DNA of 64,000 bases, taken from positions 186,001 to 250,000 of IMG/VR virus record IMGVR_UViG_3300036760_000522; one strand, written 5' to 3'. Each line of letters opens with the position of its first letter. The first letter of the stretch is position 1. The translations under genes and the position numbers were made by a program. Positions 1,153-19,326 of this stretch are shown in pieces. A model generated the notes under the pieces. It was not told the DNA's origin. It saw only the letters and a list, made by a program, of their open reading frames with translations, and did no database searches.

Positions 1153-4100
1153 TCAACACAGAGGCGATCCTAGGGGTCCGCCGATCTTAAAACAGTACAA
1201 ATCAGCCGTCATTGAGATAGCGTCGGATACTCCGATATCGAACGATTGAGGTCCGGGATCCACGGATACGCGCACTACGCCAGCACCCGGATCCCGCTCA
1301 ATCCGGTAGGTGTGGTACCGACCGTCCAGATAGTCGAGACTGATGGCACCCAAATATTTCCCATCTTGCTGATCCGAGACAATCGCGAAGCGCTCTGCTA
1401 TCCCGGAAGTCAACAAAGCAATCGCGACTGTAAACCCTGGCGCAGAAATTCCGAACCGAATCTGTGTGTCCCCGACACCAAGTGTCGAATCTGCGGCAAC
1501 TCGCAGTCGGAAAACAGCCTCCGTGATGAGACCAGGAGCATCGAGCAGCGGTGTCGGATTACGATACACTGTTGCCCCACCGACCGTACCATAGGACAAC
1601 GCACCCCCAGCAACGCTCGCGGAAACATCCACAGGAACGTCGCTCACAAGCTCCCAAGGCGTCGGCGCCGTCGTGTCGTTCTCAGGCAGAACTGTGCCGT
1701 CGTATGTCAAACAGACTTCTCTAACGTACTGGAATCCTCCAAGCTCAGGTCCACACGAATCATCAGCCGGCGCGATCAGCGCCAGGGCCCCAGTCGATTG
1801 TTCGATGACATCCAAACACGAGTACAAAATGTCATCCGGCACTTCAAGTCGAATGCGTGTTGAACCGTCATTCAAAACGAAGTCACCGTCATTGTTGAGC
1901 ACGTCTTCGGGGTTGTTCAGGACCGAGACGAACTCTGTAACGACGTAAGGAGCACGCGTCTCAAAAGTCTGCGTACTCGGCACCAACGGCGTACCTTCAT
2001 TGAGTTGGGTCCAAGCAGGCAAGCCAGGGTCTGCTAAGAAGTCAGGGTCCTTCCTCGGAACAATGCCGGTCGAGCTAGACTTGAAACTTGTCAGCTCATG
2101 TGGCAAAACTGTGTAGAGGCGCTCAGGACTCTCCATCACGTTCCACTGGTTGATGACTTGATGATGTGGAGCAATACGGAGCTCGGTCGGGCTCCGAGTA
2201 ATCCCGTATCGAACGTAGTTCCAACTCGACTGACACAGGTTTTCTGGACTGAACGAACCAAACACGATCGCGGGTAACGCAGCTGACAACGTCAACACGA
2301 TCCCAGAACTGCTACCTGGCAAGTCAGTAGAACTGTAGCTGATCCTGATCAGCGGATTAGGATCAGAGTCGAGAAACAAATCGACTTCTCCTGTACTGTC
2401 CTTGGACAACCGATACTTGTGCGAAATTGACCAGTCAGTCTCGCGAAGAATGCGATAATCAACTAACGATGGAGCAAGAGGCCATGTTGACGGGATCGTC
2501 AGAGTTGTCGAGCTCCCAACGCCGGAAATTTCATAGACGCCCTTGTTGGCCCCCGCGTCGACAATCAACAAATCGCCTGCAACCACACCAGAACCAAAAA
2601 AGTCCGCTAGAGGGTCTCCCAAGGCGTTACCGTTGATAGCGACGTTCCGTCCTGTGATCTTGGTCGAGGTGTGGTAACCCGTTAAAGCGTTAGGGTCGTA
2701 ACCCTTCCAAATACCAACAAAGCGTTGTAGGTCCGACCGTACTCGCCAAGCGTTGCAGTAATGCCAGTCTGCGACCGAAATCGATCCAACACTTACAGGT
2801 GTTGCCGATCCGAACGAGACCATGGCGTCAGTCGGGACAGGAACAGTGAACGAACTGTAGGCAAGTGACCCTACAAAAGTCCCGTCAATAAACAATGACA
2901 CCAAATCACCTGTCGTACTCTTCGACAAACGATACGTGTGAGGGTCTCCGTCAAACCAATCGAATGCAAAACGTCCAGGGACAAAGGGAACACCATCCGA
3001 GCAAAACGTCACATAGCGTACTCCTGCCAAAATCTCGAATTGCACACCAACGGCTCTGGCCCCATCGTACGCTTGAGCAAAGACCCCCGCAAAGCCAGAG
3101 CCATCGACGGTGTAGGAAATTGCTTCAACTCGAAACTCGAAAATGTAATCGACTCCTGACGCAATCACCCGCTGGTCTGAGAGAACAGGTTCCAGGTCTT
3201 CAATGAAGTAGAGAACGCCATCTGCGACCGAAGCGTCCGTCAGTCGAAGAATTCGTCCCACCATTGCAACGGCACTGCCGCCCGTTCGGGTCCAAACATA
3301 GGGCGAGAAATCCTCAGGCAGAGAACGTCCTCCATAGCTCAGCTTCGGAACCGCAGCGTCAGCGAGAAAACAGACTTGTGTCAGACGTTGACTGTCATCT
3401 ACTGCGAACATCAAACCGTACGGGTCGACGCCGTGTGTTTGTGTTCGGCCTTGCACTTCAACATCCACCACGAACTGTGAGGCTGAAGTGAGCAGCGGTT
3501 CCAGGCGTACGAAGCCTCGGAAGTCACCACCTATCAAACCAACTTGTGTGGCAGTAGAGGTGTCAGTAGCGCTTGTTGAGTCAAGCAGCAGAGTGTTAGT
3601 CGCTAGGATTGTTTCCGTTCCGTGGAAACCAATTGGGATCCACGGCTTGGCGTCGACCTCAGGCTCAACATTCGCCTCGTAACTCACGAAGCTGGATGGT
3701 GCCGTCTGTAACGCATTGGTCGGCAGGACTAAATACCGAACGAAATCCCACGCAGACACACTCGCAGCAGGACGAGACACTGAACCAAAGAAAACGTCCT
3801 GAACTTCGTCGAATGGTGAAGCCAGCTCTTCCAGAAACGGGGCTTCAACAGCAAGGATACGCAGAGTCTCAACAACTTCACCATCGACATAGAGCCGGAC
3901 TGTCCCGGAAAGATCACGGTAGAATCTGTAGCTGTGCAACACCCCCCAATCAAAATTGGCAGGCAGATTGGTTGGGTTGCCGAGTGTATCGACTCCTCCT
4001 GTCCACGCAGACACTAAGGCAGGATTGTCAGCGGATCCGCGTTTCAAGAGTCCAATTTTCTTGACGCCGGCAACATCCAAAAACCCGATTACGAAAGCCG

Positions 4101-7100
4101 AGACATCTTCAGTGAAGCCAGCAGCCACTCCTGTAAAGACGCCGTCGAGCGTCGCAGAAGTGATCTGAAAGCGCCAAGAAAGAGCTAGGATGTGAGGGAA
4201 GGACGTGTCGACTGTTCGAGTCCAGAAAATTGGTTGTCCAAAAGGGAAAGCTCCCGTCGATGCATCGATCACCGTTAGGACGCCAGCAGACGTGCTCGTG
4301 GTGCCTGTTCCACGGCGTACCCAAGGGACAGAATCAAGCTCAGGTAGTGTCGTGGCTTCGTAACTTACGAACGACTCGTTGACAATTCGTGTTTCCGAAG
4401 GGTACGCGATCCGGTGCGTCGGGCTGTTGAGCAATAGAAGCGTCGGATCGTTCAGAACCGGAGTATAGGCTCTCTCATAAGCACGATAGTGCAATTCCCG
4501 AAGCTGAGGCGGGTCAAGAGGTGCCGAGATGTCGAGGGGTGTGTAGTCACTCGGACGAATCAAAACGTTTCGGTACTGGTAAACGTGAGCTGATCGTGGC
4601 GAGACGTTGTTGAGTCGAAACTCCTTCGAGTTCAAACGCCGGATCTCTACGGTTGGGTTGCAACACCAGCTGTAGTTCACAGACACGAAGTCGTCAGGGT
4701 CAGGAGTAGTAGGCAGGACCACCTGACCCAACAACCCAATCACAGCATCCGGCACAACAAGGTTGCCGTTGACGATGACTTCAACATCGGAAGGGTCATC
4801 TGCAATCTCACCGTTGCGCGGATCAAAGAGTTCCCAAAACAAGGTTCCGCTGGATGGTTCCGGAACAGTGAAACTTGCTTGCAAGCGTGCTTGCGTCGAA
4901 GACGGTACGGACAATATTTTGAAAGTACCGGAAACCGTCGAGTACACAGTTCGGCTACCCGAACCTGTAAACAGTTCCAGCTTCACACTGTCCGCCGCGG
5001 ACAGTGAATCGTTGATCTGAACAGCCAACCCGACCACGGACGAACTCGTTGTCGGTGGTAGCCCCAAAGATCCGAGACGTAAGTATAGACCAACATGTTG
5101 TGCTGTGAGTGTCGCACCAGGCAACGTTACCTGTGACACACTGGTGATCGAAGCCCCAGAGCCTCTTTGTAGAACCAGCGGAGGGCGGGCAATGGGACCG
5201 CGATCTGTGAAAACGCTGCGTACAGTCAAAGGAACAGAAGACGAGAAGATTGCGGTATTGAAAGTCGGATCGGTCGGGTTACCTGCCACGTCCGTAGGCG
5301 TACCCAAAATGTTGACCGCCAACTGATACGATCCACTTCCAAGTCCCAGTGTTTCTAGAGAAACGCTTTCTGGACTGGTCGACCACACACGCTTGATTGC
5401 AACGCTCGTAGGACCTGTGATCGAATACTCGACAGGCGTCGTGAGCACACCGTTGGTCCGCATCGGCTGGTCAAACACGACAGTCACAACGCCTTCGTCT
5501 GTGACCGTCGTAGACTGGACCTGAGGACCAAGAATACCTGATGTGTAAAACACGTGATCGAAATCAAACAACGTATCCGCTCGTGTGCGGAGACCTCGAA
5601 TCTCAAGCAAGTAGTTCGCTTGATTGGTCAGCTTGTTCGTCGTCTCAAAAGCTATCTGTTCGACGGCCGAGAGATGACGCCAGCTGAGCGATCCGTTCTG
5701 GGAGTCCACCAAAGGTAACCGACGATCGATCTGAACGTCAATTGTAGTTAGTCCAGCTGTCGAAGCAGAACCTGTTGTGACAGGAAAGTCTGTTCCGTTG
5801 ACGTTCACTTGGTCGGAAATACCGACGGTGTCTCCCGACACAATGATAGGACCGACCGAAACGATCCGATAGACCCCCGGCACACGACCATTAAGAATTT
5901 CAATGTAGGAACCAACATCGTGACCAATGAACCCCCCATCGAGACGCAAAGTGTCCGAAAGAAAGTTGAGGTCCTGTACGTTGACCAGTAACCCTGTACT
6001 GCCCGTTTGAAGCACGTTCGCGATAGGGTTCGCACGCTGAATGTGCGCGGGCACACCGCCAGGTAGTGCGAGAAGTCGGTAGTGCGTGAGATCTTGAACG
6101 CCTGCGAACATCAGCTCAGGCACGGTCAACGTGACCCCAAACCCGTCGCTCGAAACAACGACAGGCACAGGGGTCTCGAGTTCAACCGTTACAAATTCAA
6201 ATATTGTAACGACGTCTTCGAGAACTCGCACGTTATCGGAAACGCGTGTGACGCTGTCTGTGACCGTATCGGAATCAGACAGGATCCGATCGACCTCAGC
6301 ACGCTCGGCTAAGACAGTATCGCCGGCTGTGACGCTGTCTTCGAGGACACGTGCGTTGTCTGAGTCTCGAGCGATCTCGTCTGGAATGTCGAAAATCGTG
6401 TCGTCAACATCAATGTCTACATCGATCGACTCCGCCAAGACGGTGTCCGTCGGACTAGCTACAACATCCGACAAAGAGACATCGACCAGACGATTCAAGA
6501 GAACAGCCAGATCGTCAAAAACAACGAGTAGTTCGATGAACTCTCGTACCCAAGCGACATCGCGAAGAATCGTCTCCGTCAGCGCCAATGAATCTGAAAC
6601 AACGACGCCACGTTCAGCGGTAACAAAGACTTGATCGGTGACCGCCGCAGTATCCGCCAGTGAAATGGCAATGGCCACTGAAGCTGAAACTGAATCCAGT
6701 ACGGTATCTGTGTCGGTAGCGAATCGCTCGTAAGGGACATCGATCGAGAGTGTGTCGCCGATGGAAATTGTGTCGCTAGCAATACCTCCTAGAATCGTCT
6801 CTACAGTGGTTGTGTCAGCAGCAACAATCGCATCCGAAAATTCCCGCTCATACAAGTTCCCAGCACTAAGGAGTTCCGTCAGCGAGACAATGTCTGCGAC
6901 TACCCGCTCATAGAAGACGTCAAGGGCAGTCGAGTCCGCAGTCGAGTCAATATCTTCGGAACTTCGCTGAAACTCGGCAGTTCTCGTAAGTTCGTCAAAA
7001 ACCGAAATCGTGTCGGCAGGGAAGACTGTCTCAACCAACAAAGAGGTGTCCGAAACACTGATCGTGTCGGATGCTTCCCGGGCGGTATTAGCCTCGGTGC

Positions 7101-7641
7101 TGATCTGATCGGTAAAGCTTGGGGCGTCCGAAACATCTCGTACATAGTTAGTCGCAACTTCCAATTGGTCGGTGACGGAAATCGTGTCATCACCAGAAAC
7201 ATTGGGCTCTGAAGTGACCTGATCCGTGAGTGTCGCAGTGTCGCTCGCATCACGGACGTAATCCGTGCTTGCTGCGATCTCGTCAGTAAAGCTGACGTTG
7301 TCGTTTACTCCGTAGAATCCCTCGATGACCAGTTGGTCAGCGACACTGAAGACATCGCTGACGCTACGTACGTAGTTGGTTTCGGCGAGACGCTCATCAA
7401 CCGCGCCTAAAACATCCGGCGAAGGTGTTCTTTGGAAGTCTAGACTCGTAAGTGCCGTGTCAGCGACGGAATCTGAATCCGAAGCTGACCGGTCGTAAGC
7501 GCTGGCACTCGACCCTGTGTCTGTGGTCGAAACAACGGACTCGTCGATGGTCGCCGAGTAGAGCGTACCAGTCGACGTGACTTCGCTCAGCGTGTGCGGG
7601 TCCTCGACCGCAATGGAATCGCCTAGTGTAACGTCGATCAC
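1153..7641 (-). CDS. Giant virion structural protein (2162 aa): N-terminal Asp/Ser/Thr repeat stalk followed by Ig-like and repeated lectin-like beta-sandwich domains (baseplate/fibre associated)
   Basis: Long ORF with beta-rich composition; ~20-aa repeats in the first ~490 aa; four (S/T)YxxxxxPE ... HxYR modules. Confidence 0.8.
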   Translation of the reverse strand: MIDVTLGDSIAVEDPHTLSEVTSTGTLYSATIDESVVSTTDTGSSASAYDRSASDSDSVADTALTSLDFQRTPSPDVLGAVDERLAETNYVRSVSDVFSVADQLVIEGFYGVNDNVSFTDEIAASTDYVRDASDTATLTDQVTSEPNVSGDDTISVTDQLEVATNYVRDVSDAPSFTDQISTEANTAREASDTISVSDTSLLVETVFPADTISVFDELTRTAEFQRSSEDIDSTADSTALDVFYERVVADIVSLTELLSAGNLYEREFSDAIVAADTTTVETILGGIASDTISIGDTLSIDVPYERFATDTDTVLDSVSASVAIAISLADTAAVTDQVFVTAERGVVVSDSLALTETILRDVAWVREFIELLVVFDDLAVLLNRLVDVSLSDVVASPTDTVLAESIDVDIDVDDTIFDIPDEIARDSDNARVLEDSVTAGDTVLAERAEVDRILSDSDTVTDSVTRVSDNVRVLEDVVTIFEFVTVELETPVPVVVSSDGFGVTLTVPELMFAGVQDLTHYRLLALPGGVPAHIQRANPIANVLQTGSTGLLVNVQDLNFLSDTLRLDGGFIGHDVGSYIEILNGRVPGVYRIVSVGPIIVSGDTVGISDQVNVNGTDFPVTTGSASTAGLTTIDVQIDRRLPLVDSQNGSLSWRHLSAVEQIAFETTNKLTNQANYLLEIRGLRTRADTLFDFDHVFYTSGILGPQVQSTTVTDEGVVTVVFDQPMRTNGVLTTPVEYSITGPTSVAIKRVWSTSPESVSLETLGLGSGSYQLAVNILGTPTDVAGNPTDPTFNTAIFSSSVPLTVRSVFTDRGPIARPPLVLQRGSGASITSVSQVTLPGATLTAQHVGLYLRLGSLGLPPTTSSSVVGLAVQINDSLSAADSVKLELFTGSGSRTVYSTVSGTFKILSVPSSTQARLQASFTVPEPSSGTLFWELFDPRNGEIADDPSDVEVIVNGNLVVPDAVIGLLGQVVLPTTPDPDDFVSVNYSWCCNPTVEIRRLNSKEFRLNNVSPRSAHVYQYRNVLIRPSDYTPLDISAPLDPPQLRELHYRAYERAYTPVLNDPTLLLLNSPTHRIAYPSETRIVNESFVSYEATTLPELDSVPWVRRGTGTTSTSAGVLTVIDASTGAFPFGQPIFWTRTVDTSFPHILALSWRFQITSATLDGVFTGVAAGFTEDVSAFVIGFLDVAGVKKIGLLKRGSADNPALVSAWTGGVDTLGNPTNLPANFDWGVLHSYRFYRDLSGTVRLYVDGEVVETLRILAVEAPFLEELASPFDEVQDVFFGSVSRPAASVSAWDFVRYLVLPTNALQTAPSSFVSYEANVEPEVDAKPWIPIGFHGTETILATNTLLLDSTSATDTSTATQVGLIGGDFRGFVRLEPLLTSASQFVVDVEVQGRTQTHGVDPYGLMFAVDDSQRLTQVCFLADAAVPKLSYGGRSLPEDFSPYVWTRTGGSAVAMVGRILRLTDASVADGVLYFIEDLEPVLSDQRVIASGVDYIFEFRVEAISYTVDGSGFAGVFAQAYDGARAVGVQFEILAGVRYVTFCSDGVPFVPGRFAFDWFDGDPHTYRLSKSTTGDLVSLFIDGTFVGSLAYSSFTVPVPTDAMVSFGSATPVSVGSISVADWHYCNAWRVRSDLQRFVGIWKGYDPNALTGYHTSTKITGRNVAINGNALGDPLADFFGSGVVAGDLLIVDAGANKGVYEISGVGSSTTLTIPSTWPLAPSLVDYRILRETDWSISHKYRLSKDSTGEVDLFLDSDPNPLIRISYSSTDLPGSSSGIVLTLSAALPAIVFGSFSPENLCQSSWNYVRYGITRSPTELRIAPHHQVINQWNVMESPERLYTVLPHELTSFKSSSTGIVPRKDPDFLADPGLPAWTQLNEGTPLVPSTQTFETRAPYVVTEFVSVLNNPEDVLNNDGDFVLNDGSTRIRLEVPDDILYSCLDVIEQSTGALALIAPADDSCGPELGGFQYVREVCLTYDGTVLPENDTTAPTPWELVSDVPVDVSASVAGGALSYGTVGGATVYRNPTPLLDAPGLITEAVFRLRVAADSTLGVGDTQIRFGISAPGFTVAIALLTSGIAERFAIVSDQQDGKYLGAISLDYLDGRYHTYRIERDPGAGVVRVSVDPGPQSFDIGVSDAISMTADLYCFKIGGPLGSPLC
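6170..7641 (-). repeat. Protein-level tandem repeat, ~18-21 aa unit (x-D-x5-D-x7-Y-x-R), over 20 copies
   Basis: e.g. SDVFSVADQ, SDTATLTDQ, DDTISVTDQ, SDAPSFTDQ, SDTISVSDT; degenerate at DNA level. Confidence 0.85.
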
Positions 7642-8456: not shown

Positions 8457-9515
8457 GTGAAAGCACCGTTCCCGTACTTCGGCGGCAAAAGCCGGGTCGC
8501 TCAGGCTGTCTGGAAGGCGTTCGGAGAAAACGTACCGAACTACATAGAACCGTTCTGCGGGTCCTGTGCAGTGCTTCTTGCTCGCCCCGGTGGGCCCGGA
8601 AAGATTGAAACTGTCAACGACGGTTGTTCCTACATTTGCAATTTCTGGAGATCAATCAAACACAACCCACAAAAAACTGCCGAGTGGTGCGACTGGCCTG
8701 TGTCCGAACTCGATTTGCATGCACGTCACGCATGGCTCATCAAGCAGTCGATCGATCTCCGCGAGAAGCTCCGAGCTGATCCCGACTACCACGACGCCAA
8801 AATCGCAGGATGGTGGGTCTGGGGGATCTGCCAATGGATCGGAGGGGGTTGGTGCAAAACCCCCTACCAACAAAGGCCGCACCTACATGATGGCGACCGA
8901 GGTGTGAACGCGGCAGAAAAACAGCTGAAGCAACAAATCCCTGGGATCCACGCTTCCGGTGTGCACAGCTTTGGAACACGTCTCCCAGCTATCGGCAACG
9001 ATCGGGCGCTCAATGGCCTGACTGCATCACCGGCACTCGAATGGTTTCAAATGCTCTCACAACGCCTCAGGAGAGTTCGATTGGTCCACGGCGACTGGAC
9101 CAGGGTACTCGGGTCTTCGACGCTTGGGAAGGGCAGGAACGTCGGAGGAAGACGGCCTACAGCTGTTTTTCTCGACGCCCCTTACGACGACGAGTTACGG
9201 GACCCTGGACTCTACACTGAGGATACAAAAAACCTCTCAGTGAAAGTCCGCATTTGGGCCCTTGAGCACGGTGATGATCCAGACCTCAGGATCGCACTTT
9301 GTGGGCTTGCGTCGGAGCACGACGGCCACATGCCGGCGACTTGGCGTGTCCATCGTTGGACGGGGGCTTCCGGCTACTCACGTGGAAAAAACCGAAGTCG
9401 TACACGCCACGAAGAAACAATTTGGTTCAGTCCGCACTGCCTCCATGCCGAAATGGACGAAACACTTTCGGCGCTCCACAACTTCGATTCAATTTCAGAA
9501 GCCTCTGATTCGTAG
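8457..9515 (+). CDS. DNA adenine methyltransferase (D12/Dam-like)
   Basis: PFPYFGGKSR, YIEPFCGSCAV (motif I), VND and FLDAPY (DPPY variant). Confidence 0.85.
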   Translation: MKAPFPYFGGKSRVAQAVWKAFGENVPNYIEPFCGSCAVLLARPGGPGKIETVNDGCSYICNFWRSIKHNPQKTAEWCDWPVSELDLHARHAWLIKQSIDLREKLRADPDYHDAKIAGWWVWGICQWIGGGWCKTPYQQRPHLHDGDRGVNAAEKQLKQQIPGIHASGVHSFGTRLPAIGNDRALNGLTASPALEWFQMLSQRLRRVRLVHGDWTRVLGSSTLGKGRNVGGRRPTAVFLDAPYDDELRDPGLYTEDTKNLSVKVRIWALEHGDDPDLRIALCGLASEHDGHMPATWRVHRWTGASGYSRGKNRSRTRHEETIWFSPHCLHAEMDETLSALHNFDSISEASDS

Positions 9516-9523
9516 GTACTAAC

Positions 9524-9841
9524 ATGGCTTCCAAAATCACGATCGGCTGTAGCCCTTGGGGAGAAAACTGTGCACAGCTCGGACAACCCGGCTACGTTGA
9601 GCTCGCCCAGAGAGAGCTCAAGGCTTTCAAGGCTCAGCTAGAGCGTCACTTTGCCGCCAAACACAACGGCGCAAAGCCGACATGTCATCTTGTCATTGTC
9701 GGCAACGAACACGATTACGGGACATACTACGACGTCCAAGCCAGTTACCGAAACGGGACGGAAGAGGTCGACGCATTCTGGCTCGAGAGCAACACACCAG
9801 AAAACTGGGATGCTACAGCCACAGCCGAGCTCAACGCATGA
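9524..9841 (+). CDS. Hypothetical phage protein (HDYGTYYDV motif)
   Basis: Clean ORF 8 nt after the methylase; ATGA overlap with the next gene. Confidence 0.75.
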   Translation: MASKITIGCSPWGENCAQLGQPGYVELAQRELKAFKAQLERHFAAKHNGAKPTCHLVIVGNEHDYGTYYDVQASYRNGTEEVDAFWLESNTPENWDATATAELNA

Positions 9842-10083
9842 CTTTCACAGAATGGAAGCAAGCCTGCCTCACGACACTAGAAGATATCGGGCTACTCATC
9901 GATGACTTGTGGGATTCAGACGATCCTTACGAAGTCTTCCACATGAGCAGAGAGGCTTACAAAGCGCAACAAAGCCCGCGAAGTTTTGTCGAGGACATCT
10001 TCTCAGAGGAGATTGCGCGAGCTGAGGGCGAAGCTCAAGAACGGCGCGACGCGAACGCACACTACGTGGACAGCGAAGAATGA
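9838..10083 (+). CDS. Small acidic protein (81 aa)
   Basis: Start reassigned to ATG 9838 (ATGA overlap); 21 of 81 residues are Asp/Glu. Confidence 0.7.
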   Translation: MTFTEWKQACLTTLEDIGLLIDDLWDSDDPYEVFHMSREAYKAQQSPRSFVEDIFSEEIARAEGEAQERRDANAHYVDSEE

Positions 10084-10085
10084 AT

Positions 10086-10781
10086 TTAGATGTCGGCGTA
10101 ACCCCGGCCTCTTCGGGCACGAGGTCGAACCAGGAAGAATTCAAAAGATCCGTGAGTAGGAGACGCTACAGGTGTTCCGTGGACACCTGCGATTCCAACG
10201 TCGCGAAGCGTAATACCGCTCAAAGAAGTTCCTGGCGAGCCGTGGTTGAGCTTCCACCGACTCTGTAGACCGTTGACGATGTGATCGCTACCACGAGCCG
10301 CGAACAAAGCCTGGATCTCGTTGTCTGACAGAACCCTGGTGTAGAGCCGAATGTCTTCCAGGTAGCCGCCAAATGGGCGTCCACTGTCAACTGGACTAGC
10401 CCCGATTAGCAGATCAGATGTGTTAGTCCCAACCGAAGTTGGGACACCTCCAGAGCCATCCTCCACACCATTCACGTAGACTCGATGTTCCGTAGTGCCA
10501 TCTCGAATCCCGACAACAAAGTACGTTGTACTAGCCGAGATGGTTGTAGCCCCCGCAGCGACGGGATAGGACCCATTAAAAGTACCGAACTCTAAGACAT
10601 TGGAAGAGAGAACGCTGAATTCCCACCCTGATCCTGATCCTAGACTACCCTCTTTGGAGATGATCTCGTCGCGCGTTCCAGTGCTGTCACGACGAACCCA
10701 CGCCGTAACCGTCATGTTGTTCGTCGTCTCGTGATTGTCTGAGCAGTTGACCCAATTGGATCCGTTCAACAGGATCGACAT
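10086..10781 (-). CDS. LamG/concanavalin-A-like lectin domain protein
   Basis: MTVTAWV, RVYVNG, LLIGA, FGGYLEDIRLYTRVLSDNEIQAL: typical LamG_3 signature. Confidence 0.88.
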   Translation of the reverse strand: MSILLNGSNWVNCSDNHETTNNMTVTAWVRRDSTGTRDEIISKEGSLGSGSGWEFSVLSSNVLEFGTFNGSYPVAAGATTISASTTYFVVGIRDGTTEHRVYVNGVEDGSGGVPTSVGTNTSDLLIGASPVDSGRPFGGYLEDIRLYTRVLSDNEIQALFAARGSDHIVNGLQSRWKLNHGSPGTSLSGITLRDVGIAGVHGTPVASPTHGSFEFFLVRPRARRGRGYADI

Positions 10782-10811
10782 TGGACGGCCCGCATAAAAT
10801 CACAAACTGTG

Positions 10812-10845
10812 AAACCCATCTGGTTGTGGAGAACCAGATGGGTTT
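10812..10845. terminator. Perfect 14-bp inverted repeat, probable intrinsic terminator
   Basis: AAACCCATCTGGTT-gtggag-AACCAGATGGGTTT in the intergenic gap. Confidence 0.6.
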
Positions 10846-10891
10846 GTTGTTACGCCAACAAAACTTGGAGGGTGGGTGCCGAAAGTCCCGA

Positions 10892-11380
10892 TCAGGTAAC
10901 TCGCGCTCTGTAGGTGATTCGGAGCTTGTCTGCCGTAGTCTTGTTTACTGCCGTGAACGTCGACCGAGACAAAGCCGAACCACCAGGGCTCGTGTTCTGG
11001 TTCAACACAACAACCTCACGGATGTTGGTCGCCGACTTCGTACCGCCGCCAGACGGATACGAGATCACCCACTGGAACGTTCTGGTGGCCGCCAGAAGGG
11101 TTTTGCTGTCGACGGTATTCAACGTACCGGTCACAGGTGTAACCACGTTGGTCTGACCGCTGTTGGCAGCAACGCCCGACGTTCCGATCCTCATCTGATC
11201 GAAGTCGTTGGTATTGAGGCCTGTGGCCTGGCGCCAGATTTGGCGCTTGCCTGTGTTGACGACCAAGTTCAACGCGGTCCGGCGTTGAACGACCTTTGGC
11301 CCGTGCTTTCCAGAACGAATGACTTCAACTGTGAAGATCCCGCGGGCCGTCAGGGTCTCCGTTGCTTCGATGGGCTGCAT
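10892..11380 (-). CDS. Thr-rich tail-collar/fibre subunit-like protein (162 aa)
   Basis: Start reassigned to ATG 11380 (GGAGG SD upstream); NLVVNTG and IREVVVLN...SRSTFTAVNKT...LRITY resemble tail-collar fibre domains. Confidence 0.65.
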   Translation of the reverse strand: MQPIEATETLTARGIFTVEVIRSGKHGPKVVQRRTALNLVVNTGKRQIWRQATGLNTNDFDQMRIGTSGVAANSGQTNVVTPVTGTLNTVDSKTLLAATRTFQWVISYPSGGGTKSATNIREVVVLNQNTSPGGSALSRSTFTAVNKTTADKLRITYRARVT

Positions 11381-13223
11381 TGAGTGTTTCCTCCAACAGT
11401 TTGATATTGGCTTGCGCCTCCTCGAACGCCACGGATTCGGCATCGTCTGGAAGCAGCTCTAACACTCTGCGAGCGTAATAAAGACTTTCGTCGAGCTTCC
11501 CCAATTCAGCAAAAACAGTGGTCAGCCGCTGGCACGGCAGCCAGGTATAGCTAGCCATGTCGATCCACCAGATTGTGAAGGGTGGTTGCCCTATCGTGGT
11601 CGAAGCGTAGAGGTAGAAAGAAAGGGCTTCCTCGTAACGCTCAGCAATGTAAGCCAAATCTCCGAGACGTAGCCAATGCTCAGTCCGGCTCCAATCGTCT
11701 TCAGTGGCACGAATCAACACCTCTCGGGCCTTCCCCCATTGCTGTTCCGCGGTGTAAAGCTTCGCAAGCACAAGTCGTGTGTGATACCTGAGAGGCCCAT
11801 TCTTGGGAGGCAACGACAAGAACTCTTCAAGTCGTGCAATCGCACGCTTCGGGTCGTGTTCGCGCCACTCAGCTCCCAAATAGTGTAGCGAGTTTTCGTT
11901 GCGATTCGTGATCCAGTCATCCATCAGTGATTTGCGGTTCTGGACTTTCCTCTGCTTCTGTCGTGCCAGCTCACGGTCCTTTGCTCGTTCGTGTAAAGTT
12001 TGAACCTGTGGAAGTGTGATCGCCAAGTAGTCCGGCGGATAGTCCAACGTATTGTGTGTACCACGTGTGTAGCGAATCTTCGGGTCATTACGGCAGAGCC
12101 AAGGAAACACCCACCGTTGACCTGTACCTGTACGAAAAACAACGCCAACTTTCGCGCCCTTCGGCATCTGATCAAGACCGAGCAATGCTTCGAAACCTGA
12201 AATCAGACGCTCATGACCTTCCGTCATGAAAATCCAGTCAGACGTGCAATGGTCCAGGCACTGATTGCGGACCCACGCAAAATGGATCTGCTTTTGGATT
12301 TTCTCCTCGTCAGAAACTATCTCACCCAGTTCAATGAGATCCATCTTCGGCGGACCTGAAGGCTGATCCAAATCAAATACGACATCCGCGTACTTCTCAG
12401 CAATCTCTCGCGTGTTGTCGACAGTTCTCGGATCGATTCCGATCACCATCTCATCAGCGACTCCGCGAAAGCTCGCAAGCGTTGCTTCAAGGTCCTCAGC
12501 CTCGTCACGGACAGGCATCGTCACAGACAATGTGAACGACTTAGGGAAACCGCAGACCGCCAACAAATACGGGCCGAGTACCTCGATCCGCACATCTTTG
12601 AAGTATTGTGCCAAGTCACGCTTGAAGCTCATGGCATTGTATTTCACTGTGTGCTGAGGTTCTTCATCAGGACCCAGACGATCATTCGGTACCGAGAGTA
12701 ACGCTCGTCCCTCTTGAGCCGCCAACTTGAAAATCAAAGCCCGCGTCTCAGCAGACATGTGTTCGACGAACTCTGTCGCTACTACTATTGCTGGGGACTC
12801 TTCGTGAATCAGGTCACCGTTGGTTCCAACTAAGGCACGATGCGACAGCGCACGACGTATTTCACTTTCCTGATTCAAATCCGCGACTACCGTCTCGAGG
12901 TCTTTTTCCTTCGCTTGTTGCAAAGCCTCCGTGCTGTGGTCAACAACCAGGACATTGGCCTTACGGGTGTCTCTGAGACGCGCTCCCAATACCCCAGTAC
13001 CTCCACCGAGATCTACGACACGGGCATGGTACGGGAGAATGCGTTCAATCCTCGTGTACACTTGGCTCAACGCTTGTTTACGCCATTCCTCTTGATCCTT
13101 GTCTTTCCAAAGACGATTCCAAAGATCCGGCGAGTTCGCCAGACGCGCCTGACGCTCTGCCATAGCTGCATCCAAGGCAGCCCTGTCCGCCGTGACCGTA
13201 CCGGTCACATCTGAGGTATCCAT
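11325..13223 (-). CDS. SAM-methyltransferase + GT2 glycosyltransferase + TPR fusion
   Basis: VVDLGGGTG and TEFVEH (class I MTase); LSVTMPVRDEAEDL...FAWVRN...DWIF (GT2); C-terminal TPR-like helices; AAGGAG SD. Confidence 0.85.
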   Translation of the reverse strand: MDTSDVTGTVTADRAALDAAMAERQARLANSPDLWNRLWKDKDQEEWRKQALSQVYTRIERILPYHARVVDLGGGTGVLGARLRDTRKANVLVVDHSTEALQQAKEKDLETVVADLNQESEIRRALSHRALVGTNGDLIHEESPAIVVATEFVEHMSAETRALIFKLAAQEGRALLSVPNDRLGPDEEPQHTVKYNAMSFKRDLAQYFKDVRIEVLGPYLLAVCGFPKSFTLSVTMPVRDEAEDLEATLASFRGVADEMVIGIDPRTVDNTREIAEKYADVVFDLDQPSGPPKMDLIELGEIVSDEEKIQKQIHFAWVRNQCLDHCTSDWIFMTEGHERLISGFEALLGLDQMPKGAKVGVVFRTGTGQRWVFPWLCRNDPKIRYTRGTHNTLDYPPDYLAITLPQVQTLHERAKDRELARQKQRKVQNRKSLMDDWITNRNENSLHYLGAEWREHDPKRAIARLEEFLSLPPKNGPLRYHTRLVLAKLYTAEQQWGKAREVLIRATEDDWSRTEHWLRLGDLAYIAERYEEALSFYLYASTTIGQPPFTIWWIDMASYTWLPCQRLTTVFAELGKLDESLYYARRVLELLPDDAESVAFEEAQANIKLLEETLNAAHRSNGDPDGPRDLHS

Positions 13224-13268
13224 GTATTCTCCTTTGCCGTGCTCTCTAGAACACCGGCTGAACAGTCG

Positions 13269-14093
13269 TCAGCGGTCTTCGCGCCGACGTGGAGGTGTGG
13301 GATTGACGACAAAATGCTCAATCGTCTCAGGTTGCGTTCGCGGGATCACTTGCGTTCGCGCAGGGGCTGCATTTGTGAATGCCGGGGGTGGTCGTCGCTT
13401 GACCAGGATCGCAGTCAAATCAGATTCGCCTGTAAGCGTCGCTGACAAGATCCCATTGACCCACGAATACGTCTCGTCCGAGGTCGTGAACACGTCGAGC
13501 ACTGGAGCCCGATCATAGGCAGCTGCTGTACTTGTTTCGTCTGACGCAGCAACTGAGTCTTGGGGAAAGACGTCTTTGGCAAGACCTGCGGCCAAAGACT
13601 CAGCGACAGTAATCGTGTCTGAAAGTGTCAACGCGACGTCGATCGCGTAAGCCACTGAATCCGCCAACAACGCAGAATCCGAAACAACGCGCCCTAGCTC
13701 TGTCGCCGCCGAAACAGTGTCGGTAGTCGACATGTTGTCTGTCGACGTACTTTCCTGAACGAGTCCTGCTGTGATGCTGTCGGCAACAACTGCTGCATCC
13801 CCTAACGTGTATTGGTACTCTGCGGCAAGGGCGACTAGGTCTGGGTCCAAAGACAGTACATCATCTGAGGATCTGCCGTACGCCAGGCTTCCTGCTGCGG
13901 TATCCGGATCCAAAGAAGCTGTGTCGCCGAAAACACGCTCGTAGCTCAAGTCATCCAACAATGTATCGGTTGACGTATCCTCATCTTCCGAAGGCTGGCG
14001 GTCAAACATCGATGTACCTGTCGACAACAAATCGAACGCGGGTTCGTCGAGAACGCCAACAAGTTCGTCCGAAGTCACATCAAAAAGTGCCAT
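13269..14093 (-). CDS. Acidic repeat structural protein (same ~20-aa D-x5-D repeat as the giant protein)
   Basis: GDAAVVADS, TDNMSTTDT, SDSALLADS, SDTITVAES and others; Pro/Arg-rich tail. Confidence 0.8.
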   Translation of the reverse strand: MALFDVTSDELVGVLDEPAFDLLSTGTSMFDRQPSEDEDTSTDTLLDDLSYERVFGDTASLDPDTAAGSLAYGRSSDDVLSLDPDLVALAAEYQYTLGDAAVVADSITAGLVQESTSTDNMSTTDTVSAATELGRVVSDSALLADSVAYAIDVALTLSDTITVAESLAAGLAKDVFPQDSVAASDETSTAAAYDRAPVLDVFTTSDETYSWVNGILSATLTGESDLTAILVKRRPPPAFTNAAPARTQVIPRTQPETIEHFVVNPTPPRRREDR

Positions 14094-14101
14094 AGTTCAC
14101 C

Positions 14102-14491
14102 TCACACACAAAAACTGGAACGCAAACCTTGTTCGACAAAGCTCGGCAAGTTCACAACATCGAACCCCAGTGTTATCCGTTGCGACGGAGATGGGGCAAA
14201 AGCAAAATCGAGGACCCAACGGCCAAGCGACGAAGGAAAAAAGCGGATGCCGTAGCTTGACGAAGGCATCTCCGCCCAGTAAACCGAACCTGCGACGATC
14301 AAGCCGTCCGCAACACCGACACCGTCGACCAGGGTCCAACCAACCGCCTGGTTGTTGACCGTCAATGTGAATCCAATGCTCGCCGGCAAGAGACCGGTGA
14401 CTGGATTGAAGAAGTCCGAATTGAAGATATCAACCTGATCGAAGACGACCTGGTTGATTTGTACCGACCGATTGCGAAACGTCGCAGCCAT
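14102..14491 (-). CDS. Hypothetical beta-rich structural protein
   Basis: 129-aa ORF tightly packed in the operon. Confidence 0.7.
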   Translation of the reverse strand: MAATFRNRSVQINQVVFDQVDIFNSDFFNPVTGLLPASIGFTLTVNNQAVGWTLVDGVGVADGLIVAGSVYWAEMPSSSYGIRFFPSSLGRWVLDFAFAPSPSQRITLGFDVVNLPSFVEQGLRSSFCV

Positions 14492-14502
14492 CTCGGCTCA
14501 GA

Positions 14503-14889
14503 TCACGTCTCGGCAATGCTGAAAAACCCAGCCGGGAAAAATACGACATTGCCAATGTCGATGTCCTTCGGGGTAGCCAGGTCACCAAAGTAGAGCATGT
14601 TGCCAGCCGTCAACGCGTCGTACACTTTGACACCTACGGCAGGATTACCCCAAGCTTCAAGAGGAGTCGGAAACGTGATCGGAGCCGAGATGCTCGACAC
14701 GTTCAACACAGGTACAGCAAACGCCATGAGTTGCCGCACGTAAGACGGAGCAGTGACTTCCAATCCACCGCCAGCGCTTGTCGGAGCGGTCGTCGTAAGA
14801 GCCAAATACCAAGCGGTCGGAGGCGTGAAAAGGATCCCCCGAAGATTGTGATTCAGGTTTGCGACTCGCAAATAATCGCTCTTGTTCAC
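14503..14889 (-). CDS. Small phage tail-fibre-type protein
   Basis: YLALTTTAPTSAGGGLEV...SYVRQ...ITFP...YDALTAGNMLYFG pattern common to small phage fibre proteins; GGAGG SD. Confidence 0.75.
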   Translation of the reverse strand: MNKSDYLRVANLNHNLRGILFTPPTAWYLALTTTAPTSAGGGLEVTAPSYVRQLMAFAVPVLNVSSISAPITFPTPLEAWGNPAVGVKVYDALTAGNMLYFGDLATPKDIDIGNVVFFPAGFFSIAET

Positions 14890-18525: not shown

Positions 18526-19326
18526 TTATTTTTCCCGACGCGGGACAACCCACTGTCTGGTAGTAGCTAACACCGCGGCTACATGCTTACAGACACGATT
18601 GTCACGCTCAGGGTCTCGTATGTTGGGTGGAGAGGCGGTTCCACGAGCCTTGCCGAGCTGAAAAGTTTCTTGCCGAGCGTGAAACTCTGGACCCAGCCAC
18701 TGCCATGCAGGACAAGAGCACGAAAGCTCGAGGTCAAGTTTCGTGAAATGTACTGCCGATCCCCGACGAACGGCTCGAACCTTTACGGCTTTGGCTCCGT
18801 TGCCACAATTCACACTAAAGATCCAACGCAGGTTTCTGGGATCAAATCGCTTCAAGGCAGCGGAACATCCAAGTGATCGCTCTTGGAACTTCGTATCCAA
18901 ACCTTCCAAGATCTGCTCCAGAGTTGCAGATGTCCGAATGCTTGAATCCCCGGACAACAACAGTGTCGGGGCTCCTTCCAAGCGCCAAAGCTCGACAACA
19001 AATGTCGCAGCCTTGTAGGTGTTGTCGGTATCGTCGCGATACGGATACTGTGTTTTTGTCGGAGGGTTTGGCGTGCCGAGACCAAAGTAGCTCGTCTCAC
19101 CACCGACGTCCCGAACATCTACACGTGAATGCTCCTTGGTCTTATCCGTAGGGTTCGTGATCCGCCAAATGGGCTCATCACGATTAGGCCGACGACGAGT
19201 GTCGTCAACGGGCTTCGCATGTGTCGACTGACCAGGAATGTCAGCGGGTAACGCGAGTCCACGACCAGGCGGATCTCCTGTAGGAGTCTCCGAAACCGCA
19301 CGCTGTGTTGTGAGGGCCTGTGACAC
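18526..19326 (-). CDS. SWIM zinc-finger protein
   Basis: CSCPAW...VCKHVAAVL. Confidence 0.8.
   Translation of the reverse strand: MSQALTTQRAVSETPTGDPPGRGLALPADIPGQSTHAKPVDDTRRRPNRDEPIWRITNPTDKTKEHSRVDVRDVGGETSYFGLGTPNPPTKTQYPYRDDTDNTYKAATFVVELWRLEGAPTLLLSGDSSIRTSATLEQILEGLDTKFQERSLGCSAALKRFDPRNLRWIFSVNCGNGAKAVKVRAVRRGSAVHFTKLDLELSCSCPAWQWLGPEFHARQETFQLGKARGTASPPNIRDPERDNRVCKHVAAVLATTRQWVVPRREK

What the first reader, a model, noticed from the sequence alone, without database searches (positions are those of the whole stretch)
10086..14889. Candidate virion-fibre glycosylation system: MTase-GT2-TPR enzyme embedded among Ser/Thr-rich fibre genes
Seen: a three-domain enzyme sits between an Asp/Ser/Thr repeat protein and a Thr-rich fibre-like subunit whose start overlaps its 3' end, followed by a LamG gene. 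The usual GT2 DxD (WILxLDADE) is replaced by WIFMTEGHE. Known: GT2+TPR architectures act on proteins (flagellin glycosyltransferases, SunS-type peptide glycosyltransferases), and some actinobacteriophages glycosylate virion proteins. Inference: the phage adds a possibly methylated glycan to its own appendages, for shielding, adhesion or stability, using a non-canonical active site.
Basis: partly seen in the sequence, partly recalled or inferred. Interest (0 to 1): 0.8.

Follow-up and report, generated by a model that had tools for sequence, protein, structure and literature searches.

The report
Phage fibre-linked protein glycosyltransferase–methyltransferase
A large uncultured sediment phage carries, inside its fibre gene cluster, a three-part enzyme related to bacterial enzymes that put sugars on proteins. 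The gene almost always sits directly in front of one small conserved fibre-like gene, so the phage probably sugar-coats (and methylates) part of its own particle, though nobody has shown this.

Summary
On the minus strand lie a Gp80-type fibre gene, a small ORF, an Asp/Ser/Thr-repeat protein, a 632-aa methyltransferase–GT2–TPR enzyme (11325..13223), a 162-aa Thr-rich protein "p183" (10892..11380, overlapping the enzyme's end by 56 nt) and a LamG gene.

The window is part of a 301.5-kb phage contig from sediment. The enzyme models confidently (pLDDT 90.7). Its GT2+TPR part is homologous to protein glycosyltransferases: Listeria GmaR, a flagellin O-GlcNAc transferase (profile E 3e-13), and SunS/ThuS (Foldseek E ~1e-14).

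The missing DxD is not a dead site. E335-x-H337-E338 is invariant in the family, aligns with the DxD of GmaR and SunS, and a D-G-H-E version is common in related GT2-TPR proteins.

The strongest new result is synteny. In 49 of 50 metagenomic loci the enzyme is directly followed by a p183 homologue, even at 31% enzyme identity. A repeat-rich fibre protein usually lies nearby. p183 also occurs without the enzyme.

Virion-protein glycosylation is therefore well motivated but unproven. p183 is the likeliest substrate. A link between p183's N-K-T motif and enzyme presence is only a lead.

The parts
11325..13223 (-). 632-aa soluble three-domain enzyme: class I SAM methyltransferase (aa ~1-225), GT-A/GT2 glycosyltransferase (aa ~230-415), TPR/helical domain (aa ~416-621)
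   Evidence: Pfam hits. AF2 model with pLDDT 90.7 and pTM 0.88. Profile vs PDB: GmaR E 2.9e-13, SunS 2e-5. Foldseek: SunS/ThuS E ~1e-14. No hydrophobic segment, max KD19 1.33.
12549..13223 (-). Methyltransferase domain with an intact SAM-binding motif (VVDLGGGTG; D71, G73, G77 invariant) and invariant T150-E151..E154-H155, P179-N180, E188, Q190, H191
   Evidence: Alignment A1 of 53 family members. Foldseek and PDB sequence matches to small-molecule and NDP-sugar methyltransferases: CysG, BelI, SibL, KijD1, MtmC.
11979..12536 (-). GT2 (GT-A) domain
   Evidence: Profile A4 vs PDB: GmaR E 1.6e-10, SunS 5e-3. Invariant E241, D244, D264, D269, R319, H390-N391, T409, H411.
12210..12221 (-). E335-G-H337-E338, the family's replacement for the DxD metal/nucleotide-sugar motif
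   Evidence: Aligns with IDADE (GmaR) and IDADN (SunS, ThuS). Invariant in 53/53 family members. D-G-H-E occurs in many related GT2-TPR proteins.
11361..11978 (-). TPR/helical domain, presumed substrate-binding
   Evidence: Pfam TPR_14/TPR_19. Foldseek matches to TPR proteins, the GmaR TPR region 7x9r and the OGT TPR.
10892..11380 (-). p183: 162-aa Thr-rich all-beta protein, the conserved downstream partner and likeliest substrate. Start ATG 11380 with RBS GGAGGA at 11394..11389. Overlaps the enzyme's 3' end by 56 nt.
   Evidence: phrog_5417, E 4e-12. Present directly downstream of the enzyme in 49/50 loci. 65-87% identity across relatives. AF2 pLDDT 80. Fold matches to phage 'tail fiber' and 'tail collar fiber' proteins and to a chain of the HFTV1 tail.
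10943..10945 (-). Asn146 of p183 within V-N-K-T-T (an N-X-T motif at the turn between the last two strands); candidate site that tends to be lost where the enzyme is absent (a lead only)
13269..14093 (-). 274-aa Asp/Ser/Thr-repeat protein, related to the N-terminal repeat region of the giant fibre protein
   Evidence: Composition. Clusters with the 182-1509-aa repeat proteins found near the enzyme in 13 of 16 viral loci.
14503..14889 (-). Gp80-type small fibre monomer
   Evidence: PF23140, E 2.5e-29. Gp80-type monomers build chain-like fibres in GP4, VP1 and A1002 (PMC13730344).
14102..14491 (-). 129-aa protein of unknown function, co-conserved with the module in closer relatives
10086..10781 (-). 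LamG/concanavalin-like lectin-fold protein
   Evidence: PF13385, E 1.6e-27. Present only in the closest relatives L001 and L002. A LamG domain occurs in an 888-aa downstream protein in L136.
1153..7641 (-). 2162-aa giant fibre-like protein. The N-terminal ~480 aa carry a ~19-20-residue repeat (Y-x-R-x-x-S-D...v-x-D).
   Evidence: Relatives lie 1-4 kb downstream of p183 in most loci, including enzyme-less ones.

Best explanation
The 632-aa protein is a soluble, late-expressed, bifunctional protein-modifying enzyme of the GmaR/SunS lineage of TPR-bearing GT2 glycosyltransferases, fused to a SAM-dependent methyltransferase.

Proposed mechanism (inferred, not shown):
1. The TPR/helical domain holds a folded or nascent virion fibre subunit.
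2. The GT-A domain transfers a sugar from a nucleotide-sugar onto that subunit. It would use a metal site built from E335, H337 and H390 in place of DxD.
3. The N-terminal methyltransferase methylates that sugar, or a nearby residue.

The most likely acceptor is the 162-aa Thr-rich fibre-like protein encoded immediately downstream (10892..11380). Its gene is translationally coupled to the enzyme gene. The Asp/Ser/Thr-repeat fibre proteins of the same cluster are secondary candidates.

The modified subunit would then assemble into a virion appendage. What the glycan does there (shielding, adhesion, stability) is open.
For: Shown here:
- Three-domain architecture with a confident model.
- Homology of the GT2+TPR part to enzymes with protein or peptide acceptors: GmaR E 2.9e-13, SunS 2e-5; SunS/ThuS Foldseek E ~1e-14. 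GmaR's role as a flagellin GlcNAc transferase is stated in PMC9638930.
- All catalytic-type residues are invariant in 53 family members down to 37% identity, including SAM motif I, E335/H337/E338 and H390. H390 aligns with the His of GmaR's 'RAIHEQL'.
- No membrane segment.
- The gene lies in a gap-free run of structural genes, with no promoter or terminator signal above chance.
- Gene pair: 48/50 enzyme loci with enough downstream sequence have a p183 homologue 0-400 nt downstream by tblastn, and one more was found by eye. The genes often overlap. The pair persists at 31-32% enzyme identity (L016, L055).
- p183 has tail-fibre or collar-fibre-like fold relatives. In enzyme-less elements it sits in a tail-fibre cluster after baseplate J.
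- An Asp/Ser/Thr-repeat fibre gene accompanies the pair in most loci.
- The nearest ESM Atlas clusters with MTase+GT2 domains are labelled 96-100% viral.

Precedents from the literature:
- Glycans on the capsid and tail-tube subunits of mycobacteriophages (Freeman et al. 2023, as summarised in PMC12619734).
- The chlorovirus GT-GT-MTase protein A064R, which builds a methylated capsid glycan (PMC9614988).
Against: - No direct evidence of any modification.
- No RNA run was listed for this sequence.
- No cultured phage carries the enzyme or p183.
- No nucleotide-sugar synthesis gene was found in the ORFs of the 64-kb window that were scanned.
- Adjacency shows a functional link, not an enzyme-substrate relation.
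- p183 works without the enzyme in at least three or four lineages, so modification is not needed for its basic role.
- The literal DxD is absent, and activity of an E-x-H site in a GT2 enzyme is, to my knowledge, untested.
- The methyltransferase's nearest structures act on small molecules or NDP-sugars, which does not fix its target.
Confidence: 0.5

Rival explanations
1. The enzyme glycosylates and/or methylates a different virion protein, and p183 is only a neighbour. Candidates are the Asp/Ser/Thr-repeat fibre or 'rope' proteins, the Gp80-type monomer, or the capsid or a decoration protein.
For: Asp/Ser/Thr-repeat proteins accompany the enzyme in 13/16 viral loci, and one lies directly upstream in the closest relatives. 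In L010-L012-type phages the module lies just after capsid-type genes and before the head-tail adaptor and tail sheath. Mycobacteriophage glycans are on capsid and tail-tube subunits.
Against: The repeat protein's position and size vary (182-1509 aa, upstream or 1-4 kb downstream), and it is missing within 8 kb in some loci. The p183 pairing is nearly invariant and often overlapping.
Confidence: 0.17
2. The enzyme modifies a host target during infection rather than the virion. The target could be flagellin, pilin, another surface protein or an envelope glycan, and the effect could be takeover or superinfection exclusion.
For: Its closest characterised relative, GmaR, modifies flagellin. Phage glycosyltransferases that alter host surfaces are well known (background summarised in PMC12619734).
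Against: It has no membrane segment. It is embedded in the late structural operon, not in a moron or early region. It is tightly and almost universally coupled to a virion-type gene. Serotype-converting GT2 enzymes are typically membrane-associated (own knowledge).
Confidence: 0.12
3. The protein is mainly a fibre assembly factor or chaperone. The TPR scaffold does the work, and the GT and MTase domains bind ligands without transferring them.
For: TPR domains are protein-binding scaffolds. GmaR itself moonlights as an anti-repressor through non-catalytic domains. The canonical DxD is missing. Fibre genes are often accompanied by assembly chaperones (own knowledge).
Against: SAM motif I, E335/H337/E338, H390 and some 70 other positions across both catalytic domains are invariant over deep divergence. 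That is hard to explain without catalysis. The [D/E]-x-H-E variant is shared with many GT2-TPR proteins.
Confidence: 0.08
4. The enzyme acts on phage DNA or on a nucleotide or nucleotide-sugar pool.
For: The phage encodes a 5-hmdU DNA kinase (32642..33727, PF18723, E 6e-96) and a ThyX-type protein, so it probably hypermodifies its thymidines. Some phage glycosyltransferases decorate DNA.
Against: The DNA-modification genes lie about 20 kb away among packaging and replication genes. The enzyme's relatives with known function act on proteins or peptides, and it carries a TPR domain. Its invariant neighbour is a fibre-like protein.
Confidence: 0.05

Closest known systems
GmaR of Listeria monocytogenes (flagellin beta-O-GlcNAc transferase and MogR anti-repressor; PDB 22ao GT domain, 7x9r TPR part)
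   Same: Best sequence-profile match of the GT domain (E 2.9e-13 / 1.6e-10). It has an N-terminal GT2 domain followed by TPR repeats, is a soluble cytoplasmic enzyme, and its acceptor is a subunit of an extracellular filament (PMC9638930).
   Different: GmaR has a canonical D-A-D-E motif, no methyltransferase domain and an extra anti-repressor domain. It is bacterial, not viral. Identity is low (about 20-25% in the aligned GT region).
SunS / ThuS glycocin S-glycosyltransferases (PDB 7msn, 7msp, 7msk)
   Same: Top structural matches of the whole model (Foldseek E 8.5e-15 to 1e-13). They have a GT-A domain plus a C-terminal helical/TPR-like domain. They glycosylate a specific ribosomal peptide encoded next to the enzyme gene, and SunS is encoded on the SPbeta prophage.
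   Different: They have a D-x-D motif (IDADN), no methyltransferase, Cys/Ser acceptors on small secreted bacteriocins, and 12-13% identity.
Mycobacteriophage virion glycosylation (Freeman et al. 2023, Cell Host Microbe; known here only through PMC12619734 and PMC11256854)
   Same: Phage-encoded glycosyltransferases placed beside structural genes decorate the phage's own virion proteins.
   Different: Those glycans sit on the C-termini of capsid and tail-tube subunits. No MTase-GT2-TPR fusion is reported, the hosts are Actinobacteria, and no homologue of this enzyme was found in 50,697 phage records.
Chlorovirus PBCV-1 A064R (GT-GT-methyltransferase)
   Same: A virus-encoded, soluble, roughly 640-aa three-domain protein that combines glycosyltransfer with SAM-dependent O-methylation of the sugar it adds, acting on a virion protein's glycan (PMC9614988).
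   Different: The domain order is GT-GT-MTase. It has no TPR domain, extends an existing N-glycan rather than acting on the protein, is a eukaryotic virus protein, and shows no detectable sequence relation.
Chain-like fibres of podophages GP4, VP1 and A1002 (Gp80-type monomers on a 'rope' protein)
   Same: The cluster contains a bona fide Gp80-type monomer (14503..14889, PF23140, E 2.5e-29). It also holds other 130-160-aa beta proteins and repeat-rich long proteins that could act as ropes. An enzyme-less relative has p183, then an Ig_3/repeat protein, then a Gp77-type gene.
   Different: p183 itself shows no sequence-profile similarity to Gp80; only Atlas neighbours hint at a shared fold. No glycosylation is reported for those fibres, and the phage here is a jumbo phage related to phage G, not a podophage.
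D-x-H metal sites of GT-A enzymes such as polypeptide GalNAc-transferases (GT27); own knowledge, not tested here
   Same: A carboxylate-x-His motif plus a downstream His replaces DxD for metal binding. Here the corresponding residues would be E335, H337 and H390.

Membership tests
GT2 / GT-A glycosyltransferases of the GmaR-SunS (TPR-bearing, protein-directed) type | GT-A nucleotide-binding fold with the N-terminal beta-strand/acidic motifs | tested here: met
   The PF00535 hit is marginal on its own (23.2 bits vs cutoff 23.3). Profile vs PDB gives GmaR E 2.9e-13. The AF2 model matches SunS/ThuS at E ~1e-14. The motifs LSVTMPVRDE and GIDPRTxD are conserved.
GT2 / GT-A glycosyltransferases of the GmaR-SunS type | DxD motif at the end of beta-4 | tested here: not met
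   The aligned position reads E335-G-H337-E338, invariant in the family. Related GT2-TPR proteins often carry D-G-H-E. This is a conserved variant, not decay, but the literal feature is absent.
GT2 / GT-A glycosyltransferases of the GmaR-SunS type | C-terminal TPR/helical domain following the GT domain | tested here: met
   Pfam TPR_14, E 9.6e-7. Helical repeats at aa 415-621 in the model. Foldseek alignments to SunS/ThuS span about 410-450 columns, beyond the ~190-aa GT domain.
GT2 / GT-A glycosyltransferases of the GmaR-SunS type | Transfers a sugar to a protein or peptide acceptor | not testable with these tools
   Needs biochemistry or mass spectrometry.
Class I SAM-dependent methyltransferases | Rossmann-like fold with motif I (E/D-x-G-x-G-x-G) and an acidic residue after beta-2 | tested here: met
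   VVDLGGGTG, with D71/G73/G77 invariant and D95 nearly invariant. Methyltransf_23, E 4e-7, above cutoff. Foldseek matches to SAM/SAH-bound methyltransferases.
Class I SAM-dependent methyltransferases | Identified methyl acceptor (sugar O, protein N or O, other) | not testable with these tools
   The nearest structures are small-molecule and NDP-sugar methyltransferases, which does not decide the acceptor.
Phage virion glycosylation systems | Glycosyltransferase gene embedded among virion structural genes, with conserved position | tested here: met
Phage virion glycosylation systems | Glycan demonstrated on a virion protein | not testable with these tools
   There is no cultured representative, and no RNA or protein data.
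Gp80-type chain-like fibre monomers (PF23140), asked for p183 | Sequence or profile match to PF23140 / Gp80 relatives | tested here: not met
   No Pfam hit for any of 36 members. hhalign against the window's own Gp80-type family gives probability 0.2%. Only ESM Atlas neighbour clusters include some PF23140 members.
Gp80-type chain-like fibre monomers (PF23140), asked for 14503..14889 | Match to PF23140 above the gathering score | tested here: met
   102.6 bits vs cutoff 27, E 2.5e-29.

The most novel reading that the evidence does not exclude
The pair is a self-contained virion-protein modification module of a new chemical type. In this reading, a GT-A enzyme with an E-x-H metal site modifies Asn146 in the conserved V-N-K-T turn of the fibre subunit, and the fused methyltransferase caps the modification. 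That would mean cytoplasmic N-linked glycosylation, or Asn methylation plus O-glycosylation nearby, by an enzyme unrelated to the known HMW1C-type N-glycosyltransferases. It would be the first phage-encoded N-glycosylation system and a new class of protein N-glycosyltransferase.
Probability: 0.08. Interest if true: 0.85.

Novelty: new variant of a known kind. Interest (0 to 1): 0.6.

Why it matters
Virion glycosylation by phage-encoded enzymes has so far been documented in mycobacteriophages, where it affects antibody recognition. Evidence for it elsewhere is scarce.

This family would extend the phenomenon to large soil, sediment and freshwater phages. The window's capsid protein is closest, among cultured phages, to an Acidobacteria phage and to Bacillus phage G. 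The family would also tie the phenomenon to fibre-type appendages, the parts that meet the host surface.

The nearly invariant two-gene unit (enzyme plus a 160-aa partner) is small, soluble and easy to express. A clean enzyme-substrate test is therefore possible without culturing the phage.

If the enzyme is active, the invariant E-x-H-E site and the common D-G-H-E relatives would define a metal-site variant for a large, uncharacterised branch of TPR-bearing GT2 enzymes. The enzyme could also become a tool for site-specific protein glycosylation with a methyl cap.

Tried and rejected
1. **Close relatives among cultured phages.** None were found by blastn or tblastn for the region, the enzyme or p183. 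The only tblastn hits were three short 'Listeria phage' records, which I suspect are gmaR-like host sequence (not checked).
2. **p183 as a Gp80-family member.** This fails by sequence.
3. **NCBIfam.** It gave only generic methyltransferase hits far below cutoffs.
4. **Asn146 (N-K-T) of p183 as the acceptor.**
   - The naive count is striking. With an adjacent enzyme, 46 sequences have N and 5 do not. Without one, 1 has N and 5 do not (Fisher p 3e-4).
   - It is the only column where all four enzyme-less sequences analysed differ from the consensus.
   - A phylogenetically independent-pairs test finds only 3-4 contrasts and is not significant (median p 0.5).
   - Five loci with an intact enzyme have S or T at that position, and one enzyme-less locus keeps N.
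   - I keep this as a lead only.
5. **Dead-enzyme reading of the missing DxD.** Rejected because of the family-wide invariance and the D-G-H-E relatives.
6. **Promoter and terminator scan.** It showed nothing above shuffled expectation.
7. **Expression evidence.** No RNA run was listed; only sediment and soil DNA runs hold the sequence.
8. **Bacterial genomes.** They yielded only one distant partial hit, in an Acidimicrobiales MAG, so no host could be assigned.
9. **Metal-site geometry.** The distances between E335, H337 and H390 could not be measured because model coordinates are not exposed to scripts.


Full report
**What is there.** Between 14889 and 10086 the minus strand carries six tightly packed ORFs:
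- a 128-aa protein that matches Pfam PF23140, 'Podophage GP4 fiber I protein gp80', at E 2.5e-29;
- a 129-aa protein with no family;
- a 274-aa protein with 12% Asp and 22% Ser+Thr;
- a 632-aa protein with methyltransferase, GT2 and TPR hits;
- a small protein here called p183;
- a LamG-fold protein (PF13385, E 1.6e-27).

For p183 the ORF finder's first start is 11443. However, ATG 11380 is preceded by GGAGGA at 11394..11389, and homologues align from about that point. The product is therefore 162 aa (10892..11380; 16% Thr) and overlaps the enzyme's last 56 nt. Gaps between the genes are 8-110 nt, and a consensus scan finds no promoters or terminators above shuffled expectation. The genes read as one late operon. 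The motif WIFMTEGHE is at aa 330-338, with E335-G-H337-E338 encoded at 12221..12210.

**Genome context.** The window is part of IMG/VR contig UViG_3300036760_000522, which is 301,550 bp long. DNA runs holding it are sediment and soil metagenomes, and no RNA run was listed. Reading right to left, the window encodes:
- replication and recombination genes (RecA, RecD-type helicase, clamp loader, exonuclease, ThyX-type protein);
- terminase (37809..39794) and portal (33724..35565);
- a 5-hmdU DNA kinase (32642..33727);
- a protease-like protein and the major head protein (26290..27174);
- about 11 kb of unassigned structural-region genes;
- the fibre cluster, ending in a 2162-aa protein (1153..7641).

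The head protein is 72% identical to one in an uncultured 485-kb phage, 47% to Tunturiibacter phage Tunturi_5 (309 kb) and 37% to Bacillus phage G. No cultured phage has the enzyme or p183.

**The enzyme.** With a 53-sequence alignment, AlphaFold2 gives a confident three-domain model (pLDDT 90.7, pTM 0.88).
- *Structural matches.* A Foldseek search of the PDB puts the glycocin S-glycosyltransferases SunS and ThuS first (E 8.5e-15 to 1e-13), over about 410-450 alignment columns that extend beyond the GT-A domain into the helical region. TPR proteins, SAM-dependent methyltransferases of the small-molecule and NDP-sugar kind, and the TPR part of GmaR follow.
- *Sequence matches.* A sequence-profile search of the PDB gives GmaR's glycosyltransferase domain as the best non-TPR hit (E 2.9e-13), with SunS at 2e-5. 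A GT-only profile repeats this: GmaR 1.6e-10, SunS 5e-3.
- *What the relatives do.* GmaR attaches GlcNAc to flagellin (PMC9638930). SunS-type enzymes glycosylate ribosomal peptides.
- *Solubility.* The protein has no membrane-spanning segment.

**The active site.** In all three PDB alignments the DxD of the solved enzymes (IDADE in GmaR, IDADN in SunS and ThuS) falls on M-T-E335-G-H337-E338. Across 53 family members, down to 37% identity, E335, H337 and E338 are invariant. So are H390-N391, where H390 aligns with the His of GmaR's 'RAIHEQL', and the SAM-binding D71/G73/G77 of the methyltransferase domain.

A profile search of 1.84 billion representative proteins finds 184 hits at E<=1e-30. About 25 of these are full-length three-domain clusters. 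There is also a long tail of GT2-TPR proteins. Among the 148 best hits retrieved, D-A-D-E/D is common. A large subset carries D-G-H-E, including more distant three-domain relatives, and the core family carries [TS]-E-[GA]-H-E.

The motif is therefore a conserved [D/E]-x-H-E variant of a sizeable subclade, not a decayed site. From general knowledge, carboxylate-x-His plus a downstream His binds the metal in some GT-A enzymes, such as polypeptide GalNAc-transferases. I could not check the geometry because model coordinates are not exposed.

**Distribution and synteny.** The family is large. In the 90%-clustered database, 279 proteins passed E<=1e-3 among the 8,000 candidates scored, and the best 120 all score below 1e-174. 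The nearest ESM Atlas clusters with MTase+GT2 domains are labelled 96-100% viral.

I fetched 16 viral loci and 78 metagenome loci.
- Of 50 loci that contain the enzyme's C-terminus and at least 550 nt downstream, 48 have a p183 homologue. In 47 it lies within 0-400 nt on the same strand, often overlapping; in one (L062) it is 775 nt away and inverted.
- One more (L056) has a divergent homologue visible by eye.
- The single exception (L050) has a degenerate methyltransferase domain.
- The pair persists at 31-32% enzyme identity (L016, L055).
- p183 is more conserved than the enzyme: about 65-75% against about 49% in the same loci.

Starting from p183 instead, 29 of 35 loci with upstream room have the enzyme. 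The enzyme-less cases are a prophage-like element, L117, L120, L134, P0225 and L135.
- The prophage-like element has tape measure, baseplate J, a beta-helix protein, p183, a 954-aa Ig_3/repeat protein and a Gp77-type gene (L017-19/L103).

So the enzyme implies p183, but p183 does not imply the enzyme. That is what one expects of a modifier and its target.

Asp/Ser/Thr-repeat proteins related to 13269..14093 and to the N-terminus of the 2162-aa protein lie near the pair in 13 of 16 viral loci and in the enzyme-less loci too. They lie directly upstream only in the closer relatives.

In L011-type phages the order is: portal, Mu-F-like protein, protease, two capsid-region proteins, four small genes, enzyme, p183, two small genes, a 965-aa repeat protein, head-tail adaptor, tail sheath. 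The appendage may therefore be attached at the head or neck in some lineages and at the baseplate in others.

**p183.** The model (pLDDT 80) is an all-beta protein with one helix. It has a long conserved Ser/Thr-rich coil at residues 67-91 and two Gly/Ser/Thr loops.
- The only significant PDB match is a 953-aa chain of the Haloferax tailed virus 1 tail (E 1e-4).
- Among predicted viral structures it matches many small uncharacterised phage proteins and proteins named tail fibre or tail collar fibre (34 hits at E<=1e-3).
- ESM Atlas neighbours are viral clusters, a few of which include PF23140 or PF12571 members.
- By sequence it is not a Gp80-family member.

Recent structures show that Gp80-type monomers of 140-170 aa form dimers strung on a repeat-bearing 'rope' protein to make chain-like fibres (PMC13730344). 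The present cluster has one true Gp80-type gene, other small beta proteins, and long proteins with a ~19-20-residue repeat (Y-x-R-x-x-S-D...). It could build something similar. That is an inference.

**A lead on the site.** Asn146 of p183 (V-N-K-T-T, codon 10945..10943) lies at the turn between the last two strands.
- Among distinct sequences with an adjacent enzyme, 46 have N and 5 have S or T. Among those without, 1 has N and 5 have T or S (Fisher p 3e-4).
- It is the only column where all four enzyme-less sequences in that analysis differ from a >=75% consensus.
- A tree places the enzyme-less sequences in at least three well-supported separate positions, next to N-bearing, enzyme-linked sisters.
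- An independent-pairs test has only 3-4 contrasts and is not significant.
- The five S/T exceptions have enzymes with every invariant residue intact.

I therefore report this as a lead, not a finding.

**Mechanism and rivals.** The best-supported reading (confidence about 0.5) is a soluble, late, bifunctional enzyme that glycosylates and methylates a virion fibre component, most likely p183.
- Shown: homology, conservation of catalytic-type residues, solubility, operon position, and the gene pair.
- Inferred: activity, the acceptor, the order of reactions, and the biological role.

The rivals are:
- another virion acceptor, namely the repeat proteins or the capsid (0.17);
- a host target (0.12);
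- a non-catalytic assembly factor (0.08);
- DNA or nucleotide modification (0.05), raised by the 5-hmdU kinase but disfavoured by its distance and by the enzyme's relatives.

**Comparison and novelty.** The thing works like GmaR or SunS: a TPR-guided GT2 enzyme acting on a specific protein encoded nearby. At the level of biology it resembles mycobacteriophage virion glycosylation and the chlorovirus GT-GT-MTase protein A064R (PMC9614988). It is not a textbook member of the GT2 family because the literal DxD is absent. The fusion to a methyltransferase, the near-exclusive viral distribution and the fixed pairing with a fibre-like gene were not described in the papers returned by my full-text searches. 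I rate it a new variant of a known kind, of moderate to high interest. The two-gene unit makes the hypothesis directly testable without culturing the phage.

Noticed in passing
window 32642..33727 (-), also 62217..63149 (-): A 5-hmdU DNA kinase (PF18723, E 6e-96) sits between the portal and protease genes, and a ThyX-type protein (PF02511, E 1.5e-48) lies in the replication region. The phage probably hypermodifies its thymidines.
   Followed up: no
window 24172..26070 (-): A 632-aa ORF next to the major head gene combines LAGLIDADG endonuclease, HTH and N6/N4 DNA methylase pieces. It looks like a homing endonuclease fused to, or inserted into, a methylase.
   Followed up: no
window 8457..10083 (+): A Dam-type DNA methyltransferase and two small ORFs form an opposite-strand island between the LamG gene and the giant fibre gene. 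The island is present in L001 and L002 but not in the 62%-identity relative L003, so it looks like an inserted cassette.
   Followed up: partly
window 1153..7641 (-), first ~480 aa; also 13269..14093 (-): A ~19-20-residue repeat (Y-x-R-x-x-S-D...v-x-D) fills the N-terminus of the 2162-aa protein, and related proteins of 182-1509 aa accompany p183 in most loci. It may be a 'rope' with docking repeats for small fibre subunits, as in the GP4 and A1002 chain-like fibres.
   Followed up: partly
L017/L018/L019 10001..10489 (L018 is from a 1.65-Mb contig): A p183 homologue 72% identical to the window's sits without the enzyme in a tail module: tape measure, baseplate J, beta-helix protein, p183, a 954-aa Ig_3/repeat protein, and a Gp77-type gene. 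A TIR-domain gene lies next to it. It is a prophage-like element in a bacterial-size contig.
   Followed up: partly
window 10943..10945 (Asn146 of p183); loci L017, L117, L120, L134, L135: The N-K-T motif is kept in 46/51 p183 proteins with an adjacent enzyme but in only 1/6 without. Only 3-4 independent contrasts exist, so the association is not significant once phylogeny is considered.
   Followed up: partly
L050 90..1832: This enzyme relative (40% identity) has lost SAM-binding motif I and many other invariant residues of the methyltransferase domain, while the GT site (FMTEAHE) is intact. It is the only locus with no p183 homologue downstream.
   Followed up: no
proteins P0271, P0276, P0283, P0288 and many others: A large set of GT2-TPR proteins outside the phage family carries D-G-H-E where GmaR and SunS have D-A-D-E/N. 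This [D/E]-x-H-E branch of TPR-bearing GT2 enzymes appears uncharacterised.
   Followed up: partly
L011 72..16794: In 47-100-kb relatives the enzyme-p183-repeat-protein module lies between capsid-region genes and the head-tail adaptor and tail sheath genes. This suggests a head- or neck-attached appendage in those phages.
   Followed up: partly
window 18526..19326 (-) and 44440..45102 (-): A SWIM zinc-finger protein lies in the middle of the structural region, and a sigma-70 region-4 protein (a possible phage sigma factor) lies in the replication region.
   Followed up: no
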